IMG/VR virus record: IMGVR_UViG_3300003322_000571
Span: 186,001-250,000 of that record
Length of the DNA: 64,000 nt
Strand: one strand, 5' to 3'
Below, piece by piece: positions 39,652 through 64,000 of the stretch. The notes below the pieces were generated by a model. It made no database searches and was not told the origin of the DNA. It saw only the letters and a list, made by a program, of their open reading frames with translations. Position 1 is the first letter of the stretch. Each line of letters opens with the position of its first letter. Position numbers and translations under genes: made by a program.

Positions 39652-41100
39652 TTAACCAAACAAGCCACCAAGACTCTGACTAAACTTCGTAGACAAGTCA
39701 GATACGGCTGTCGTAGCTTGGTTAACCGCCCCGCCGATTCCTGCAACCGGTGAGCCGGTACTTGTAGTGTTAAGAGGATCGCACGATGTAGTCGCAGGAG
39801 TTGGTGCACCAAATGGATTGATACCGCCCGTACGTGGACCTTCCGTAGTTGTAGAGCCGTCGTTGTAGCGCAATGGATACACTGCACCACGCTGAAGGTC
39901 TGCAATCTTGTACTTACCGCCGTTGAGATCGCTGCTGACGCTTGTTGTGTCGATGAAAACGCTGTCGTATGCGAACGACATAGTCAATTCAGTACCTTCC
40001 GTACCGTCAGCCATATCAAGGTCGTCGAGTGCAAGTTGTGTGATACGTGGGTTGAAGAAACGGTGTACGTTCATCATGTTGCCACCGTCGTACACATGGT
40101 ACAGACGAATTTCACGGAAGATTTGCTTAGCGTCACCTGCCAAAGCTCCAAGAGATGCAGCATATGTGCTGCCTGGAACCGCTCCGTTGATCGTATTCGC
40201 AACTAGCGTCTTATCGACAAAGTCCATACCACCTTCTTCAAACATGCCTGAATCACCGTTCTCCATGCTTGTGATTGGAGACATTGCTTGGAGATATGCT
40301 TTGTAGAAAGAAACAGCAAAGTTCAAGTTGTCATCATGGAACGACATACTCATTTCGCCAAATTCAGTACGAATAGGTACTTTTGAGCGGAAATTGTAGT
40401 AATTGACGTCTTCGTGGACAAATTTAGCATCTGGACGAGTCGTCTTCTTGACAGTGAAGGCCATGTCAAGAGGACCAAATTGATTACTTCCGAGTGCTGA
40501 ATATGCAGCATCGGGAATAAACTGGACTACGAACAGAAACTTGAACTTAGGAGCTCGTGCAATCAAGTCAAGAGCGTATGGAGACGCTTCGCAGTGCTCA
40601 CCGAGAGCAGTTTGTGCATCACCTTGCGCAGGCGTGAAGATATTACGCGCCAAGCGTTCCAAATTGGTGAAGTCCTGAATGTATCCTGGAATGTCTCTGG
40701 ACTTAAATGTACCGCCCTTTACCTGCTGGAAAATCTGCTTTGCTTGCCCGTATGCTTGGTTCGCAATTGCGGGATTGAATCCTTGAACGGCTTGAATAAC
40801 CGTTGGTGCGATTCCTGTTTGATCCAACACCCAATTAGCACCTGACTCGAGTGTAGAGCCGATGGTGTTAGGCAATGCGCCACAACCCGCACGGATTGAA
40901 TTTGAAATGCTAGCAAGATTACGAAGGCCAGCACCGATTTTACCGCCACCTACACTATTAAGAACAGCGAGATCGCCGACTTTTCCAACAGAGTTAAAGA
41001 AGTCATGGCGAGTAGATGTAGCGGCTGCAATACCTGCTCCGCTTTTTGCAGCGTAAGCAGGTTCACATTGCTTGACAGTAAAAGTCCTTGGATCAGCCAT
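39652..41100 (-). CDS. Baseplate/tail-tube initiator-like protein (tube-fold C-terminal domain)
   Basis: C-terminal half has tube-like motifs (VKKTTRPDAKF..EDVNYYNFR...EFGEMSMSFHDDN...LTMSFAYD); lies next to the tube gene. Confidence 0.5.
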   Translation of the reverse strand: MADPRTFTVKQCEPAYAAKSGAGIAAATSTRHDFFNSVGKVGDLAVLNSVGGGKIGAGLRNLASISNSIRAGCGALPNTIGSTLESGANWVLDQTGIAPTVIQAVQGFNPAIANQAYGQAKQIFQQVKGGTFKSRDIPGYIQDFTNLERLARNIFTPAQGDAQTALGEHCEASPYALDLIARAPKFKFLFVVQFIPDAAYSALGSNQFGPLDMAFTVKKTTRPDAKFVHEDVNYYNFRSKVPIRTEFGEMSMSFHDDNLNFAVSFYKAYLQAMSPITSMENGDSGMFEEGGMDFVDKTLVANTINGAVPGSTYAASLGALAGDAKQIFREIRLYHVYDGGNMMNVHRFFNPRITQLALDDLDMADGTEGTELTMSFAYDSVFIDTTSVSSDLNGGKYKIADLQRGAVYPLRYNDGSTTTEGPRTGGINPFGAPTPATTSCDPLNTTSTGSPVAGIGGAVNQATTAVSDLSTKFSQSLGGLFG

Positions 41101-41191: not shown

Positions 41192-41782
41192 TTACTGAAC
41201 TCGACCAGCACCACCAGTTGCAACACCTTGACCTTGTGTGTAGCCACCGATGTTCTGACGAGCATGGTCATAGCTAACTGTCAATGCGATTGTTACTGGT
41301 TCACCAGTTTCATAGTTCAATTCACCGTAGTCGACAGACTCAATGAAGCAGCCTTCAACCGTCCACTTTTCAACAACTTGATCGTTACCGTCCATCAAGT
41401 CGAGGTACGTCACATACTTGTACAGCGAACCTTCACCAGCTGTTGCAAGCCACTGGCCTTCAGCACCAGTAAGCCATTGTTGCTTCTGCATTTGTTGTTG
41501 AACAACAATAGCAGCAGTACCAGTGATATCGTTCTGCAAAGTCAGTGTCATTGGATCCCACGAGTGCTTCGTAGCGATCATCGACACAGAGTTGTAACGG
41601 TGCAAAGCGACCTTTTCCCACGTCAACTTAGGAAGTGTGACTTGCGTAGCCTGCATAGAAACAGGTTGGCTATCAGCACCACCACCCATGTTGGCGAACG
41701 TTACACGCCACAGGTTCTTGCGCTTAGGCTGCAAGATACCCGAGCCTACGCCCGGGATACCAAAATCGTTGATTGTACTCAC
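41192..41782 (-). CDS. Tail tube protein (gp19-like)
   Basis: GTG start after GGAGAG; QVTLPKL, W.PMTLTLQ, EKWTVEGCFI..VDYGELNY and LTVSYD; downstream of the sheath gene. Confidence 0.85.
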   Translation of the reverse strand: MSTINDFGIPGVGSGILQPKRKNLWRVTFANMGGGADSQPVSMQATQVTLPKLTWEKVALHRYNSVSMIATKHSWDPMTLTLQNDITGTAAIVVQQQMQKQQWLTGAEGQWLATAGEGSLYKYVTYLDLMDGNDQVVEKWTVEGCFIESVDYGELNYETGEPVTIALTVSYDHARQNIGGYTQGQGVATGGAGRVQ

Positions 41783-41805: not shown

Positions 41806-43533
41806 TTAGATCTCAGCGCCAGTTGCGACGATGCGGATCGGGATGTACAAGAATTCAACTGCCTTGACTGGCTTGACAGCGATGTCGATGTACAGCTCAT
41901 TCCTGTCAATACGATCAGGTGTGTTGTTCGTTTCGTCACAAACTGTTGCGAAGTCATACAGACCGCGCTTAACAATCAGATCACCCAAGAAGCCGTCAAC
42001 CATTGCCTTCAAGTTGTCGCGTGTCAGTTGATCGTTTGGTTCGAACAGGAACGCGATCGTGTTCTTGCGGAGTTGACGCTTGATGTAAACCATCAGACGG
42101 GCAACGTTGACACGGTCAAGTGCGGATGCATCAGGCGCAGAAGTCTTCTGACCAAATACCATCAAACCACGACCTGGCATGTAGTACATTGGGTTGACGT
42201 TCGTGAAGTACTTGTACAAGTTATCACGTTGGCCACGGTTCAAAGCCGTATTAACAAACGTTGTTGCTGTGCCAAGCGTACCGGATACATAACCGACATC
42301 GGAAACGCCAGAGATCAAACCACGACGTGTACCTGCAGGAGCCCACCACACATCAGCAACGTTGTCACTGTATGTGTACGTACGCAGTGCTGTACCGGAA
42401 GCTGCAACGAATACGTTTGCACCGTCCAGGTTTGAAGCCAAGCTGTGTGGGTAGTAGTAAGCGACGTATGGCGAATTGCGACGTGCAGTTGTACCAGCCC
42501 ATGTTGCTGTATCTTCAGGCGACAAATTGAATGGTGTGTCAGCAATAACGAAAGCTTCTTCGTTGATGTCAACGTTCAAAGCGAGCAATTCGTCAATCGT
42601 TTCATGGAAGCCAGGGCACAAGATCAAGTTGTACTCGTACGTTTCACCACGAATGTCTGTATTGCTGTTGATCGAAGCCTGGAGAGCCTGAACAACTGCG
42701 ACACGACGTGCAGCGTCGTTAGCACCGAGACTTGTCTGGTTCATGAATGGAATTGTGTACTTGAACTGATCAGCAGCACCGAGCAACGTGTTAGCTGCTT
42801 CTTGAGCTGTCCATTCCGTAGGAACAACACCGCCGAGACCAGCCGTAACCCATTCGATCGCAATACCTGTCAAACCAATAAACTGGCCTGTAGGAGCTGC
42901 ATCATAGCCGTTAGCGTATACGTTGTACGGAGACGCCGTTGCGTTGTTTGTGAACGTAGCTTGCGAGTTACGGAACGAGAACGATTCCCAAACCATTTGC
43001 GTAGCTTGTGCAGACAACGACAAGAAACGTGTTTGATCAACAGTTACCTTGTAACCAGGATCAGCTGGTGTATAACCGTTCGACAAGTTGTATTCATTCA
43101 ACCAAGCATTAACGAGGTTTTCGAGAACGTATGCGGATTCCTGCAATTTGCGATCCCACATTGCACGAATGTTGAGCAAGCTATCGTCCAAGTTGACGTT
43201 CGCACGAATGACATAAGCGAGATTACCAACACCGAGGAACTGGTTCAGAGCGAACAAACCATACTCGTTACGGCAATCACCGTGCTGCGGCAAGCCGGCC
43301 GTATCTGTCAAGAAACGTGGAACACCATACAATTCTGTACTCTGCTTAAGCGACGTAACAGTACGGATGACGTCATGTTCAAACGTACCAGCGGCATCAG
43401 ACGTACCATTAGCCTGTTTCTTTTCATCAGCGGTAGCAATGAAAATCAAAGGCACAGTGACGGCGGAAGCTGGGATGAAGAAGCTCTCATCCGTAATTGT
43501 AACGCTTACGCCAGGACTCACTAGATTTGCCAT
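41806..43533 (-). CDS. Tail sheath protein (gp18-like)
   Basis: LVSPGVSVTITDES, WWAPAGTRRG, GQKT, LDRVNVARL, FEPND..TR and VCDETNNTPDRIDRNEL..DIAVKP.KAVEF. Confidence 0.95.
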   Translation of the reverse strand: MANLVSPGVSVTITDESFFIPASAVTVPLIFIATADEKKQANGTSDAAGTFEHDVIRTVTSLKQSTELYGVPRFLTDTAGLPQHGDCRNEYGLFALNQFLGVGNLAYVIRANVNLDDSLLNIRAMWDRKLQESAYVLENLVNAWLNEYNLSNGYTPADPGYKVTVDQTRFLSLSAQATQMVWESFSFRNSQATFTNNATASPYNVYANGYDAAPTGQFIGLTGIAIEWVTAGLGGVVPTEWTAQEAANTLLGAADQFKYTIPFMNQTSLGANDAARRVAVVQALQASINSNTDIRGETYEYNLILCPGFHETIDELLALNVDINEEAFVIADTPFNLSPEDTATWAGTTARRNSPYVAYYYPHSLASNLDGANVFVAASGTALRTYTYSDNVADVWWAPAGTRRGLISGVSDVGYVSGTLGTATTFVNTALNRGQRDNLYKYFTNVNPMYYMPGRGLMVFGQKTSAPDASALDRVNVARLMVYIKRQLRKNTIAFLFEPNDQLTRDNLKAMVDGFLGDLIVKRGLYDFATVCDETNNTPDRIDRNELYIDIAVKPVKAVEFLYIPIRIVATGAEI

Positions 43534-45930: not shown

Positions 45931-45950
45931 GTTGTTTTCCGGAGGCAAAA

Positions 45951-45976
45951 AAATACCCCACCTAGGTGGGGTATTT
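45951..45976. terminator. Perfect 26-bp palindrome acting as terminator and overlapping a late promoter
   Basis: AAATACCCCACCTAGGTGGGGTATTT; followed by a T7 run on the minus strand; TAAATA overlaps the 5' arm. Confidence 0.7.
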
Positions 45977-58300: not shown

Positions 58301-58597
58301 TTACATTTCGCAGTCTTCTTCGTCCTTCTTTTGATCCTTTTTGGCCTTCTTCACATCCTTTTCGACTTTGTCAAGGTCTTTGTCGACTTTCTTATCGTCT
58401 TCATCGTCCTTGTCGTCGTCTTCTTTCTTGTCTTCCTTCTTATCGTCCTTGTCTTCTTCGTCAGCTTCCTCACCAAGGAGGATACCGCGAGTCTTGTCAC
58501 GGAGATATTCATGGAAAGCAGTCTTAGCAGCAGCATCGTCCTTATTGATAACTGCTTCGATAACAGCCGTCAGCTGTTGCTTCATTTTCTCGTTCAT
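58301..58597 (-). CDS. Prohead core protein (gp67/gp68-like), highly charged
   Basis: Between portal and protease; Asp/Glu/Lys low-complexity tail. Confidence 0.65.
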   Translation of the reverse strand: MNEKMKQQLTAVIEAVINKDDAAAKTAFHEYLRDKTRGILLGEEADEEDKDDKKEDKKEDDDKDDEDDKKVDKDLDKVEKDVKKAKKDQKKDEEDCEM

Positions 58598-60429: not shown

Positions 60430-62733
60430 TCAGCCGATATATTGATATTTTGAACTAAATTTAGTATCTGCGCGAAGTGGTTGGGTCTTCGTTTGATCGC
60501 TCTTTTCACGATCAGTCAAAGTAGAAGCTGCAAGTGTCTTCTTTTGCAAATCAATTAGTTCGCGATTCTGACTAATCATCGTCGACAAATAATCGTTCGA
60601 CTGATCAAGCTGTTTAACTTGCTGAGCAATTCCGCTAGCAGTAGCAGTTGTCGCTGATTCGATCACGACATTTGACTCAATCATCGCTTTTGTCTGATCC
60701 TTGACAGCCTTAGTAACAGATGTTGTCGGCAAATTAACAGGTGCAGTAGACGCTGGGCTTGCACCTGCAGGACTATCAGGATCAAACTGACTGCCTACGG
60801 CTTTACCAGCTTTACCACCGAGGTACGATCCGCCAATACCGCCGCCAAGTCCGCCTAGCAAACCACCGAGAACCGTACCAATCCCCGGCAAGATAGCCGT
60901 ACCGAGTGCTGCACCAGCAAGTGCACCACCCCATCCGCCTGCAATACCACCACCTGCAGAGCCGACTCCCTTACCAATCGACGCTCCAGCTTTGCCTGTT
61001 TGCTGATACTCGTCATATCCTTCGTACGCACCGTAGGCGAGCGATGCAGCAGGACCTAGGATCTTTCCAGCTGTACCGAGAGTACGGCCAAGACCACTCG
61101 CGGCTTTACCAGCCGCGGCCCCCTCACCAGCGACTGCACCGCCAATTCCAAGCTTTCCACCGAGCTTGCCAATGTTGCCGACCATGCCACGAGCAGCAAT
61201 CACGGCAACCATTGCGGCAATCCCCGATAGCACGACTCCAGACCAATGTTGTCCAGAAGCGATCAGCTTAGCTTGTTCCCAGATACCTGCAGTAGCAAGT
61301 GCTGTTTTAGCGAGTGGATCCTTCGTGGCATCAATGAATTGCTTCGAAAGATCAGCATTAGCACTCTTCAACGTATCACCAAGCGTTGTTGAGAAGTTGC
61401 TATTCTTGCCGTAATACTGTTCTAGATCCAGCTTGTCAAGAAGCGTTGTGGCAAAAATCTCCGTACCTAGACCTTGACCTGCTGCTTGGTCCATTGCATT
61501 AGCAGCACGTTGGCTGAACTCTTGCAACATGCGGGTTTGCTCAGGCGTTGCTCGCTTACCAGCAGTAATTGCCTGCGCAGCTTCCTCACCACCAGCAATA
61601 CCCATTGCTCCCGACAATGCTCGAACGCGAGCTGCTTGACGGAGACGATCAAGAGGTTTTGCAGCAACCATCTTGTTCAACATCTTTGCAGCTTCGCGCG
61701 CTTGCTCAGCAGACATTCCTGCTGCAATAGACTGTTGAATCAACGCACGTTGGCTGCGAAGGATTGCTTCACGTTCTTCCTTACGCGCTGAACGAAGCAT
61801 GTCAATCGATTCAGCGTCACCGGCAACATCGTTATACAGTTGATGCGCTTGTTCGACAGAAAGTCCTGTTTGACGACGAAGCGCTACGAGATCGTTCTGG
61901 TATTGTTCCATACCGATCATCGTTGGGCGAATGCCCTTTGTAGCAAAGTCGTTAGCTGTCTGAGTGGCGAGTTTGAGGCCTTCCTCGAACGAGCCAGTCA
62001 TGATCGTGAAGCGATCAACAGAATTTGTCAGCTGCTTAAGCCCTTCAGACGTGCCGCCCATAGCATTAAACATCTGACGAGCACCGTTTGTGATGTTCGC
62101 AAATGTCGTTGCATCAAGCTTAAACTTGAGAGCTTCGTTCTGCTGAGCAGCCATTGCATCAATCAAGTTCCCGGTACCTTCTACAAGACCACCGTTCGCT
62201 TTATTTTGCGATAGAACTTGCTTGCCTGCTGTCGTTACGGCAGAGCCGAACCATGAAACGGCAAGGCTAGCCCAGTCAACATTCTTAACGAGGCCACTGA
62301 ATGATTTGTTAACAGCGGTCGTTGCTGATTGCAGCCTCTGCGAAGCAGTGCGGTGTCTGTCAGCAGCATTAGTGACAGTACGGCCAAGACGCTCTAGTTC
62401 ATCTGTAGGAGCGTTGTTTGCAATTGCAGCAGCTTGATCACGGTGAGCCTTTTCAAGAGCATGTGCCGCTTCAATCTCAGCCTTCTTTGCCTTGATTGCT
62501 TCTTGGACAAGCTTTTCTTGCTGTTCGTTCAGTTTCCTACCAGCGCGCAATTGCTTCGAGAACTCAGCAAGGTCGTTTGTTGCGTCTTCACGCGCCCGAC
62601 GTTGTGCTTCTTGTGCTCGAGCAATATTCGATTGACTTGCCAACAAACGTTCAATACCTTGAGTCAACAACTGCAGTTGTTGCGCGGTTGCTTGAAGCTG
62701 TTGATTAAGTACTGTGGTGTTGACGTCTGCCAT
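60430..62733 (-). CDS. Tape-measure-like protein (767 aa)
   Basis: Long Ala/Gln-rich helical protein with C-terminal Gly-zipper hydrophobic segments; adjacent to the gp26-like gene. Confidence 0.65.
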   Translation of the reverse strand: MADVNTTVLNQQLQATAQQLQLLTQGIERLLASQSNIARAQEAQRRAREDATNDLAEFSKQLRAGRKLNEQQEKLVQEAIKAKKAEIEAAHALEKAHRDQAAAIANNAPTDELERLGRTVTNAADRHRTASQRLQSATTAVNKSFSGLVKNVDWASLAVSWFGSAVTTAGKQVLSQNKANGGLVEGTGNLIDAMAAQQNEALKFKLDATTFANITNGARQMFNAMGGTSEGLKQLTNSVDRFTIMTGSFEEGLKLATQTANDFATKGIRPTMIGMEQYQNDLVALRRQTGLSVEQAHQLYNDVAGDAESIDMLRSARKEEREAILRSQRALIQQSIAAGMSAEQAREAAKMLNKMVAAKPLDRLRQAARVRALSGAMGIAGGEEAAQAITAGKRATPEQTRMLQEFSQRAANAMDQAAGQGLGTEIFATTLLDKLDLEQYYGKNSNFSTTLGDTLKSANADLSKQFIDATKDPLAKTALATAGIWEQAKLIASGQHWSGVVLSGIAAMVAVIAARGMVGNIGKLGGKLGIGGAVAGEGAAAGKAASGLGRTLGTAGKILGPAASLAYGAYEGYDEYQQTGKAGASIGKGVGSAGGGIAGGWGGALAGAALGTAILPGIGTVLGGLLGGLGGGIGGSYLGGKAGKAVGSQFDPDSPAGASPASTAPVNLPTTSVTKAVKDQTKAMIESNVVIESATTATASGIAQQVKQLDQSNDYLSTMISQNRELIDLQKKTLAASTLTDREKSDQTKTQPLRADTKFSSKYQYIG

Positions 62734-62752
62734 GGAAACCCCTTTTATCCAG

Positions 62753-62784
62753 GTATTTAGACGAAGGAACCGTTGGCTAAATAC
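62753..62784. promoter_or_regulatory. Divergent late promoter pair (TAAATA), 8-bp inverted repeat
   Basis: GTATTTAG (62753-62760) and CTAAATAC (62777-62784) upstream of divergent starts 62733(-) and 62806(+). Confidence 0.65.
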
Positions 62785-62805
62785 GCAGTACTAAAAGGAG
62801 TCTAT

Positions 62806-63612
62806 ATGACAGAAACAACAAACCCACTGTTGAAACGTTTGCGCATTCCCGGTGCAACATTTAGATTGCCGTCTCAGGGAATCCTGTATACAAACGGTGA
62901 ACTAGATCAGTCGGTTAAGAATGGTGAGGTTGAAGTAAATCCGTTGACGGCAATTGATGAAATTGCTCTCAGCTCGTCCGATAAACTAATTTCCGGTAAG
63001 GCTGTTACGGAAGTAATCTCACGTTGTATTCCTCAGGTTTTGAAGCCAGAACTACTGCTCAATACCGACGTTGAATTCTTGCTTGTTGCACTTCGCATTG
63101 TTACATTTGGCGATGTGATTGAAGTGCAGTACCAACATACATGCGATGGTGCAAAGGAACATACGTACAAGGTTAACTTGCAAGCCATGTCGGCACGTGC
63201 TCGTCCTCTTGATCCGACTGCGATCACAAAGGAATACACGATCACATTGCCTAATGAACAAGTCGTTGTTCTTCGCCCGCTGATCTTCTCTGATGTAATT
63301 GCACTTGTTCAGTCACATGCAGAACTCAGCGGTAAGGAACGGAACGAGATCCCAGTAGATCAGGAAGAGCTGATGCAATTTGCTAACAAGTCGATTGCAG
63401 CTATTGTGATGTCAGTTGATGGAATCACAAACCAGGAGCAGATTCGTGAATGGGTTTCCGCATTGCCACTGGGCTATAAGAGGCAAATTGAGCAAACTGC
63501 TCATGCGGTAACAAGGTGGGGTGTAGATACGACGAGTAAGCAGGTATGTGCTGATTGCAAAGCGAAAATCGATGTCCCAGTGATTGTCAATCCAGTAAGT
63601 TTTTTTACCTAA
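62806..63612 (+). CDS. Baseplate hub assembly protein (T4 gp26-like)
   Basis: LPSQG..Y...VEVNPLTAIDEI...DVEFLLVALRI.TFG, CxHxC and terminal CADC; start at 62806 after AAGGAG. Confidence 0.75.
   Translation: MTETTNPLLKRLRIPGATFRLPSQGILYTNGELDQSVKNGEVEVNPLTAIDEIALSSSDKLISGKAVTEVISRCIPQVLKPELLLNTDVEFLLVALRIVTFGDVIEVQYQHTCDGAKEHTYKVNLQAMSARARPLDPTAITKEYTITLPNEQVVVLRPLIFSDVIALVQSHAELSGKERNEIPVDQEELMQFANKSIAAIVMSVDGITNQEQIREWVSALPLGYKRQIEQTAHAVTRWGVDTTSKQVCADCKAKIDVPVIVNPVSFFT
63600..63606 (+). promoter_or_regulatory. Candidate -1 ribosomal frameshift heptamer T TTT TTT
   Basis: agT TTT TTT ACC TAA, in phase at the end of the gp26-like ORF; the -1 frame stays open to 63839. Confidence 0.6.
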
Positions 63613-63839
63613 CACTTAGGTCAGGCGATCTGGATAACATCCGAAAGATGTTCGCCAGCTTGAAACAAGACATCGACAATCTGATACTCAATATTACTGA
63701 GCTGACGTACTTCATGCGAGGTGCGATTCAATACGACGACATGTTTGACATGTGTTTCCTAGAGCGGCAGAAGGTGAGTGAATTCATCGAAAAACGCCTG
63801 GAAGTAGAGAAGAAGAAACCACCATCGCAGCAATATTGA
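63600..63839 (+). CDS. gp51-like baseplate assembly domain, probably expressed as a frameshift extension of the upstream ORF (or from ATG 63648)
   Basis: -1 frame reads FYLTLRSGDLDNIRKMFASLKQDIDNLILNITELTYFMRGAIQYDDMFDMCFLERQKVSEFIEKRLE, resembling gp51/chaperone C-terminal helices. Confidence 0.6.
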   Translation, partial: FFYLTLRSGDLDNIRKMFASLKQDIDNLILNITELTYFMRGAIQYDDMFDMCFLERQKVSEFIEKRLEVEKKKPPSQQY

Positions 63840-63886
63840 GCTGAACTAAGTGATCTAGTCCTGCATGCCGGCATTATCAGCTTCGC

Positions 63887-63924
63887 AGAACTCGTAGGAG
63901 CGCTTCGCTTATCCTACGAGTTCT
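63887..63924. other. 13-bp perfect inverted repeat (hairpin)
   Basis: AGAACTCGTAGGA-12 nt-TCCTACGAGTTCT downstream of the last ORF. Confidence 0.6.
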
Positions 63925-64000
63925 CGTTTCGTTTGAAGTACCTAGCGGAAATAAACGGGAAGCAATCACAATCCCTCCCCCGCATTTTCGTAGCTGACTG

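What the first reader, a model, noticed from the sequence alone, without database searches (positions are those of the whole stretch)
62806..63839. Probable programmed -1 frameshift fusing gp26-like and gp51-like ORFs beside the tape-measure gene
Seen: the gp26-like ORF ends ...S-F-F-T-stop over agT TTT TTT ACC TAA, a perfect X XXY YYZ heptamer at 63600-63606. The -1 frame is open for ~79 more codons, and its first in-frame ATG after the overlap (63648) has only a weak RBS. The gene is divergent from, and adjacent to, the tape-measure-like gene. Established: tail assembly chaperones of lambda (G/GT) and P2 (E/E', a T-run slip site) use this arrangement. Inference: this T4-like phage makes gp26 and a gp26-gp51 fusion by frameshifting, which would functionally link T4 hub-assembly proteins to G/GT-type tape-measure chaperones.
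Basis: partly seen in the sequence, partly recalled or inferred. Interest (0 to 1): 0.75.

Follow-up and report, generated by a model that had tools for sequence, protein, structure and literature searches.

The report
Frameshifted tail chaperone gene, jumbo phage
A jumbo phage's gp26-like tail-assembly gene carries a conserved slippery T-run that most likely lets one gene make a short and a long protein, the same pair that phage T4 encodes as two genes (gp26 and gp51); the principle was published for T4-like phages in 2022, so this is a clear new example, not a new mechanism.

Summary
A gp26-like ORF (62806-63612, Pfam PF12322) ends AGT TTT TTT ACC TAA. The T7 run at 63600-63606 is in X_XXY_YYZ phase, and the -1 frame stays open for 77 more codons, to 63839.

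Comparative evidence supports programmed recoding.
- All 20 homologous loci examined (jumbo phages, metagenomic relatives, cyanophages, KVP40) have NNT TTT TTY in the same phase.
- The zero-frame tail after the heptamer is short and unconserved. The -1 peptide is conserved from the first codon after the slip.
- PA5oct has no ATG, GTG or TTG anywhere in its -1 ORF.
- Three natural proteins carry the same extension fused in frame.
- T7 runs are depleted in the window (2 found, about 21 expected). This is the only one inside coding sequence.

The extension matches the C-terminal tail of T4 gp51. T4 gp26 and gp51 are both full-length PF12322 proteins. T4 has two such genes; this phage and 13 other phages have one.

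The two best structural matches of the gp26-like model are tail assembly chaperones, with modest scores.

The gp26/gp51 chaperone link and poly-T slip signals in T4-like phages were published by Vladimirov et al. 2022, which I know only from citations. Verdict: a new member of a known kind. Ribosomal versus transcriptional slippage is unresolved.

The parts
62795..62800 (+). Shine-Dalgarno-like aaggag, 5 nt before the ATG of the gp26-like gene
   Evidence: read directly from the sequence
62806..63612 (+). gp26-like gene, zero-frame (short) product of 268 aa; the TAC-N equivalent
   Evidence: PF12322 T4_baseplate E 3.9e-15, 56.6 bits against a cut-off of 24.5; phrog_150 baseplate hub E 9.5e-19; AF2 model pLDDT 91.7; the only PF12322 gene in the 350-kb genome
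63600..63606 (+). slippery heptamer T_TTT_TTT in X_XXY_YYZ phase (codons AGT TTT TTT)
   Evidence: NNT TTT TTY in the same phase in 20 of 20 homologous loci, after seven different preceding amino acids; only T7 in coding sequence in the window
63610..63612 (+). zero-frame stop TAA, one codon after the heptamer
   Evidence: in the window's clade the zero frame always ends one residue after FF
63606..63839 (+). -1 frame extension: 77 codons plus TGA, matching the C-terminal tail of T4 gp51; predicted helical hairpin
   Evidence: colinear alignment from the slip site in 10 phages; hhalign against the gp51 C-terminus E 8.5e-5 and 6.2e-6; 199 library hits including 3 in-frame fusions; AF2 pLDDT 86.9, helices 9-38, 43-47 and 51-69
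62806..63839 (+). span coding the inferred long (frameshift) product of 344 aa: residues 1-267 in frame 0, then 77 in frame -1; the TAC-NC / gp51 equivalent
   Evidence: inference from the parts above; natural single-ORF counterparts P0268, P0284 and P0302 (325-340 aa) exist
63608..63663 (+). predicted stem-loops 3' of the heptamer (63608-63620 and 63621-63663); a possible stimulator, not conserved across the family
   Evidence: -18 kcal/mol, z -2.56; comparable hairpins in RsoM2USA, Xoo-sp13 and PA5oct, none in RaK2, L024 or L029
63648..63650 (+). in-frame ATG (codon 15 of the extension), the gene callers' start for a 63-aa ORF; a possible minor independent start
   Evidence: Met15 is conserved in the window's clade, but the 14 codons before it are also conserved and free of stops in the -1 frame only
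60430..62733 (-). tape-measure-like gene (767 aa), divergent neighbour and presumed client of the chaperone
   Evidence: phrog_167 and phrog_794 tail length tape measure E 6e-13 and 2e-10; the portal<-TMP<- ->gp26 synteny is conserved in most jumbo relatives examined (not in Atu_ph07)

Best explanation
The gp26-like gene is the tail assembly chaperone gene of a RaK2/PA5oct/RsoM2USA-type jumbo myophage, and it encodes two proteins. Most ribosomes stop at TAA 63610 and make a 268-aa short form, the equivalent of T4 gp26. A minority slip back one base on T_TTT_TTT (63600-63606), where both tRNA-Phe can re-pair. These ribosomes continue in the -1 frame to 63839 and make a 344-aa long form, whose extra 77-residue helical tail corresponds to the C-terminal tail of T4 gp51. 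By analogy with lambda G/GT and with T4 gp26/gp51, the shared N-terminal body would hold the tape measure protein encoded next door, and the long form's tail would recruit tube or hub components. Shown here: the motif, its phase, the open and conserved -1 frame, the single gene copy, and the similarity to gp26 and gp51. Inferred: that the shift is ribosomal, its efficiency, and the chaperone activity.
For: PF12322 membership. In-phase NNT TTT TTY in 20 of 20 loci spanning jumbo phages, metagenomic relatives, cyanophages S-PM2 and P-SSM2, and KVP40; the preceding residue varies (S, V, A, H, R, N, D) but always uses a T-ending codon, and the product of the background T3 frequencies is 1e-8.7. 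HTVC008M has the same in-phase heptamer. All 61 database homologues end FF plus 0-4 residues. The zero-frame tails after the heptamer are 0-11 codons long and unconserved, while the -1 peptides align colinearly from the first codon. In the window's clade, the 14 codons before the first ATG show 49% identity and no stops in frame -1, against 22-26% identity with stops in the other frames. PA5oct has no start codon in its -1 ORF; RsoM2USA and RaK2 have none until codons 48 and 31. Gene callers pick starts giving 40, 58, 62, 74-76 and 93 aa. Three natural proteins of 325-340 aa carry the extension in frame. The extension matches the gp51 C-terminus. There is one PF12322 gene in this genome and in 13 other phages, and two in T4. 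T7 runs are depleted and this is the only coding one. The T-run is reproduced by an independent assembly and by a relative without gaps. The top two structural matches are tail assembly chaperones. Prior literature describes the same system in T4-like phages.
Against: There is no protein or RNA data for this phage or any relative, and no RNA run holds the sequence. A conserved Met at extension codon 15 allows some independent initiation in this clade. A 3' stimulatory structure is predicted here but is not conserved across the family. Many T-runs also suit RNA-polymerase slippage, which would give the identical protein. RM378 has its extension in the +1 frame, which a simple -1 ribosomal model does not cover. 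Structural similarity to TACs is modest (Z 6.4 and 5.5; Foldseek E 0.4). The gene is not between the tube and tape-measure genes as in classical TAC loci. The complex prediction gave no answer.
Confidence: 0.72

Rival explanations
1. The same two products are made, but by transcriptional slippage. RNA polymerase stutters on the T-run and adds one U to a fraction of the mRNAs, and standard translation of those mRNAs gives the long form.
For: The site is a pure homopolymer: T7 here, T8-T9 in L024 and RsoM2USA. RM378 has a T7 run with the extension in the +1 frame, which loss of one U would explain as easily as gain of one U explains the others. The title of Vladimirov et al. [quoted passage not shown] The protein product would be identical, so none of my comparative evidence excludes this.
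Against: Most lineages keep only six T's followed by C (T_TTT_TTC), although a synonymous TTC-to-TTT change would lengthen the run. Runs of six are poor polymerase slippage sites by established knowledge. The strict codon phase, with a T in the third position of seven different preceding codons, is what tandem tRNA re-pairing requires; it lengthens the run by only one base.
Confidence: 0.17
2. There is no recoding. The downstream ORF is a separate small gene (63 aa from ATG 63648), as annotated in cyanophages and KVP40 ('gp51'), and it acts as a free subunit.
For: Met15 is conserved in the window's clade. Several relatives have ATGA or TAATG stop-start overlaps typical of coupled genes (Phosso, 121Q, L028, L030). 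Public records annotate it as a separate gene.
Against: PA5oct lacks any start codon. RsoM2USA and RaK2 lack one for the conserved first half. The -1 frame is conserved and free of stops upstream of the ATG. Called starts are heterogeneous. The nucleotide-level conservation of the heptamer would be left unexplained. In-frame fusions and T4 gp51 show that the piece works as a C-terminal tail. The RBS before 63648 is weak.
Confidence: 0.08
3. It is a homopolymer sequencing or assembly error, and the real gene is a single in-frame long ORF, as in P0284.
For: Metagenomic contig; homopolymers are error-prone; one relative (L047) is in frame at CAA TTT TTT AAC.
Against: The same frame relation holds in 20 independent genomes, including Sanger-era and hybrid-sequenced isolates. 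An independent assembler reproduces T7, and a diverged relative shows no gap.
Confidence: 0.02

Closest known systems
T4 gp26 and gp51 (baseplate hub subunit and hub assembly catalyst; identified as the T4 tail assembly chaperones by Vladimirov, Gautam and Davidson, Virology 2022)
   Same: Same Pfam family, PF12322. T4 gp26 stops 3 residues after the FF motif, like the zero-frame product here. T4 gp51 continues past the equivalent motif with a tail that matches the -1 extension.
   Different: T4 uses two separate, divergently transcribed genes and has no slippery site (GAG TTC TTT GAG). This phage has one gene plus a T-run. The extension here is about 25 residues longer.
gp26 plus mini-'gp51' of cyanomyophages (S-PM2, P-SSM2), pelagiphage HTVC008M and vibriophage KVP40
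   Same: A single PF12322 gene ending NNT TTT TTY, followed within 0-1 codons by a stop. A 55-57-codon annotated 'gp51' ORF (S-PM2, P-SSM2, KVP40), or in HTVC008M an open -1 frame, lies in the -1 frame.
   Different: About 25% identity or less to the window's protein. Those phages have a start codon right after the stop, so the piece is annotated as a separate gene. Sullivan et al. 2010 (PMC3037559) noted the missing ~200 N-terminal residues without explaining them.
Lambda G/GT and P2 E/E+E' tail assembly chaperones (Levin 1993; Christie 2002; Xu, Hendrix and Duda 2004; from established knowledge)
   Same: Short and long forms from one locus through a -1 shift at an in-phase heptamer near the 3' end. 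The gene lies next to the tape measure gene. P2 also uses a T-run.
   Different: No sequence similarity. The protein is twice as large and has conserved cysteine pairs. The gene is divergent from the tape measure gene rather than upstream of it on the same strand, and it is 21 kb from the tube gene.
HK97 tail assembly chaperone (PDB 2ob9) and B. subtilis YqbN (PDB 3klu, an XkdN-like TAC by my own knowledge)
   Same: These are the best two structural matches of the AF2 model: Z 6.4 with 98 of 107 residues aligned, and Z 5.5. Foldseek gives probability 0.80 and TM 0.51 by target.
   Different: The scores are below the level at which a shared fold is safe to call. The match is spread over residues 17-237 with large insertions.

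Membership tests
Pfam PF12322 T4_baseplate (T4 gp26/gp51 family) | Match to the family profile above the curated cut-off over most of its length | tested here: met
   56.6 bits against a cut-off of 24.5; residues 45-267 on profile positions 19-218 of 219. T4 gp26 and gp51 both match the profile from 1 to 219.
Pfam PF12322 T4_baseplate (T4 gp26/gp51 family) | Conserved C-terminal CxxC followed by the ...FF motif at the end of the common domain | tested here: met
   C248, C251, F266 and F267 are invariant in 10 jumbo homologues. All 61 database homologues end FF plus 0-4 residues. T4 gp26 ends CPEC...EFFELL.
Frameshift-encoded tail assembly chaperone pair (lambda G/GT paradigm) | [quoted passage not shown] | tested here: met
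   T_TTT_TTT at 63600-63606; NNT TTT TTY in 20 of 20 loci.
Frameshift-encoded tail assembly chaperone pair (lambda G/GT paradigm) | Downstream ORF open and conserved in the shifted frame from the slip site, with no need for its own start | tested here: met
   PA5oct has no ATG/GTG/TTG in 73 codons.
Frameshift-encoded tail assembly chaperone pair (lambda G/GT paradigm) | Position between the tail tube gene and the tape measure gene, on the same strand | tested here: not met
   The gene is adjacent to the tape-measure-like gene but divergent from it (60430-62733, minus strand). The tube gene is at 41192-41782.
Frameshift-encoded tail assembly chaperone pair (lambda G/GT paradigm) | TAC fold | tested here: inconclusive
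   The top two of 952 aligned PDB chains are TACs (2ob9, Z 6.4; 3klu, Z 5.5), but Z is below 8 and the Foldseek E-value is 0.4.
Frameshift-encoded tail assembly chaperone pair (lambda G/GT paradigm) | Both forms are made in a fixed ratio and required for tail assembly; they bind the tape measure and tube proteins | not testable with these tools
   No RNA or protein data. The complex prediction of tube plus extension gave no answer.
T4 gp51-type long form | PF12322 body followed by a C-terminal tail homologous to gp51 residues ~200-249 | tested here: met
   hhalign of extension profiles against the gp51 C-terminal profile: E 8.5e-5 (probability 60%) and, with 86 sequences, E 6.2e-6 (probability 85%) over 35 columns. 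Colinear near-global alignment of natural fusions to gp51. The evidence is of moderate strength.
T4 gp51-type long form | Encoded as one uninterrupted ORF | tested here: not met
   A -1 shift at 63600-63606 is needed. Uninterrupted versions exist elsewhere (P0268, P0284, P0302).
Transcriptional (RNA polymerase) slippage sites | Long homopolymer run, and mRNA heterogeneous in run length | not testable with these tools
   The run is T7 here and T6 in most lineages. No RNA run holds the sequence.

The most novel reading that the evidence does not exclude
The single-gene, slip-site arrangement is the ancestral state of the whole T4 supergroup, jumbo RaK2/PA5oct-like phages included. It has been resolved into separate short and long genes more than once independently: a divergent pair in T4 and a tandem pair in the uncultured phage L048. 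At least one lineage (RM378) has moved the extension to the +1 frame, which suggests that the T-run can act in either direction, possibly at the RNA polymerase level.
Probability: 0.4. Interest if true: 0.5.

Novelty: new member of a known kind. Interest (0 to 1): 0.4.

Why it matters
It gives a simple account of the 'truncated gp51' of cyanophages and vibriophages noted in 2010: the missing 200 residues come from gp26 through the slip. It also extends that account to the large RaK2/121Q/PA5oct/RsoM2USA/Atu_ph07 group of jumbo phages. None of the annotated public records I inspected carries a joined CDS for this gene, and several (PA5oct, RaK2, RsoM2USA) leave the extension unannotated. For annotation pipelines the rule is clear: a PF12322 gene ending NNT TTT TTY should be called with a -1 shift. 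For phage biology it offers cultured systems in which the short-to-long chaperone ratio can be manipulated. Because the principle is already published for T4-like phages, the gain is breadth and confirmation, not a new mechanism.

Tried and rejected
- blastn of the region against the phage collection: no match.
- The search for related loci with an alignment and with the single protein in IMG/VR: no usable pattern, no relatives.
- PF28602, a newer Pfam family precomputed on gp51 homologues: not in the local library, so it could not be scanned.
- hhalign of the extension profile against the single T4 gp51 sequence: weak (E 0.05). Profiles on both sides were needed.
- Complex prediction of the tail tube protein with the extension: no answer, so it counts neither for nor against.
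- Foldseek of the extension model against BFVD: only an unnamed 60-aa protein at 51% identity, nothing named gp51.
- Promoter and terminator scan of 62600-64000: nothing beyond chance.
- Homopolymer error: considered and rejected (and the 20-genome comparison).
- A conserved 3' stimulatory hairpin: considered and rejected. It is present in four of the nine sequences folded and clearly absent in three.
- The primary paper by Vladimirov et al. 2022 is not held. I rely on two citing papers for its content.

Full report
**Observation**

An ORF starting at ATG 62806, preceded by aaggag, ends ...CCA GTA AGT TTT TTT ACC TAA. Its stop is at 63610-63612, and the seven T's at 63600-63606 are in exact X_XXY_YYZ phase. 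The -1 frame is open from 63555 to 63839. A -1 slip on the heptamer would join residues 1-267 to 77 further codons (63606-63836) and give 344 aa instead of 268. The junction reads ...NPVSFF-YLTLR.

T7/A7 runs are strongly avoided in this window: 2 found against 20.7 +/- 5.4 in shuffles. The other run is the T-tail of an intergenic hairpin terminator. The slip site is therefore the only T7 inside coding sequence in 64 kb.

The run is not an assembler's slip as far as can be checked. A Logan contig of the source run matches 62700-63900 without a difference. A diverged relative from another metagenome covers 63494-63834 with 26 substitutions and no gap. Both are contigs, not raw reads.

**What the gene is**

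- The 268-aa protein is a member of Pfam PF12322 (T4_baseplate; 56.6 bits against a cut-off of 24.5) and of phrog_150, baseplate hub.
- The window belongs to a complete 350,089-bp virus record with terminal repeats.
- Its nearest cultured relatives are jumbo myophages: RsoM2USA at 38% identity, then Xoo-sp13, CM1, PA5oct, Phosso, Atu_ph07, RaK2, 121Q and CBB.
- The neighbours are a T4-type prohead protease, a portal and a 767-aa tape-measure-like protein on the opposite strand. The order portal <- tape measure <- -> gp26-like is kept in most of these phages (Atu_ph07 lacks it).

**Comparative test of the frameshift**

I examined 20 loci in the codon-level test:
- ten in the named-phage comparison: this window and nine named jumbo phages;
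- seven metagenomic relatives;
- S-PM2, P-SSM2 and KVP40.

HTVC008M shows the same in-phase heptamer.

In every locus the gene ends with NNT TTT TTY in the same phase. The residue before the two Phe varies (S, V, A, H, R, N, D) yet always uses its T-ending codon, and the first Phe is always TTT. The product of the genes' own third-position T frequencies is 1e-8.7, which ignores shared ancestry.

After the heptamer the zero frame runs on for 0-11 unconserved codons. The -1 frame is open for 58-82 codons, and its translation aligns colinearly from the first codon in all ten phages.

In the window's own clade, the 14 codons between the slip and the first ATG have no stop and 49% identity in frame -1. 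The other two frames show 22-26% identity and contain stops.

PA5oct has no ATG, GTG or TTG in its 73-codon -1 ORF. RsoM2USA and RaK2 have none before codons 48 and 31, and their records leave the stretch unannotated.

All 61 database homologues of the protein end FF plus 0-4 residues.

A profile of the extension finds 199 cluster representatives. Almost all are small ORFs whose called starts are scattered, giving 40, 58, 62, 74-76 and 93 aa. That is what gene callers do when there is no real start. Three hits are 325-340-aa proteins with the PF12322 body and the extension in one frame.

**Relation to T4**

In T4, genes 26 and 51 are divergent neighbours. Both products match PF12322 from end to end.
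- gp26 (208 aa) stops three residues after its FF motif and has no slippery site.
- gp51 (249 aa) continues with a 48-residue tail.

That tail matches the -1 extension. Profile-profile E-values are 8.5e-5 with 10 sequences and 6.2e-6 (probability 85%) with 86 sequences. The natural fusions align colinearly with gp51 through both cysteine motifs and the tail. The KVP40 record itself notes that its 55-aa ORF resembles the last 40 residues of T4 gp51.

T4 has two PF12322 genes. This genome, nine jumbo relatives, S-PM2, P-SSM2, HTVC008M, KVP40 and RM378 have one each.

The simplest reading is that the unshifted product corresponds to gp26 and the shifted product to gp51. An uncultured phage (L048) shows a third layout: a tandem short and long gene pair in the same synteny.

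**Chaperone link**

The AF2 model of the 268-aa protein is confident (pLDDT 91.7). Its two best PDB matches by VIA-align are:
- the HK97 tail assembly chaperone, Z 6.4, with 98 of 107 residues aligned;
- B. subtilis YqbN, Z 5.5.

Foldseek ranks 2ob9 second, with probability 0.80 but E 0.4. This is suggestive, not proof. The extension is predicted as a helical hairpin (pLDDT 86.9).

**Mechanism**

Tandem re-pairing of two tRNA-Phe on U_UUU_UUY fits the strict phase and the retention of TTC in most lineages. The stop one codon downstream and a predicted hairpin (z -2.56) could help, but hairpins are not conserved.

RNA-polymerase slippage would give the same protein and cannot be excluded. In RM378 the extension lies in the +1 frame after a T7 run, which is a point in favour of polymerase slippage or of a different kind of shift.

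**Prior art**

- Sullivan et al. 2010 recorded that cyanophage and vibriophage gp51 lack the first ~200 residues.
- Vladimirov, Gautam and Davidson (Virology 2022) identified the TAC genes of T4-like phages. I could not read the paper.
- One citing paper says that some T4-like phages carry a short gene and a long fusion gene instead of frameshifting.
- Another citing paper says that poly-T sequences are known -1 signals in the TAC-N genes of T4-like phages.
- I found no paper that applies this to the RaK2/PA5oct-type jumbo phages. None of the annotated records I inspected carries a joined CDS.

**Verdict**

This is a well-supported new member of a known kind. The ribosomal-versus-transcriptional question and all the biochemistry remain open.

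Noticed in passing
window 45947-45953 (minus strand) and the whole window: T7/A7 runs are about ten-fold depleted: 2 found against about 21 expected. The only other run is the T-tail of a hairpin terminator (ccccacc tagg tggggta + T7) between two minus-strand structural genes.
   Followed up: yes
L042 (Rhodothermus phage RM378, NC_004735 around 25.9-26.7 kb): Its single PF12322 gene ends TCC TTT TTT TGG AAT AAG TTA TGA, and a 76-codon extension is open in the +1 frame, not the -1 frame. This could be a +1/-2 shift, loss of a U by the polymerase, or an old sequencing error.
   Followed up: partly
L048 3988-5996 (contig of GCA_902386595.1): A tandem pair of PF12322 genes: a 338-aa short form ending ...GSNFLPEQK, then a 331-aa long form with the extension in frame. 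It lies beside a tape-measure-like gene and a T4-type portal that carries a weak intein hit. This is a second, independent-looking 'two genes instead of a slip' layout.
   Followed up: partly
L047 225-1247 (P0284): A 340-aa long form encoded in frame through CAA TTT TTT AAC, so no shift is needed. The 4-kb contig is too short to show whether a separate short gene exists, and a homopolymer miscount cannot be excluded.
   Followed up: no
window 58301-58597 (minus strand): A 98-aa ORF between the prohead protease and portal genes whose C-terminal half is almost entirely D, E and K. It may be a scaffold or internal head protein.
   Followed up: no
window 39652-41100 (minus strand): A 482-aa protein with a tail-tube-like domain (phrog_4542, E 4.5e-8, residues 182-385), directly beside the 196-aa tail tube gene (41192-41782) and the sheath gene (41806-43533).
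   Followed up: no
window 63887-63924: A 13-bp inverted repeat (agaactcgtagga / tcctacgagttct) followed by a T-rich stretch, just after the extension's stop. It is a likely terminator closing the two-ORF unit but was not called by the scan because its loop is 12 nt. A RuvC-like gene converges from beyond the window's end (L012 2816-3295, minus strand).
   Followed up: partly
public records MK797984 (PA5oct), JQ513383 (RaK2), MG752970 (RsoM2USA): The conserved -1 extension is not annotated at all in these records. In others it appears as a 39-76-aa hypothetical protein with arbitrary starts.
   Followed up: yes
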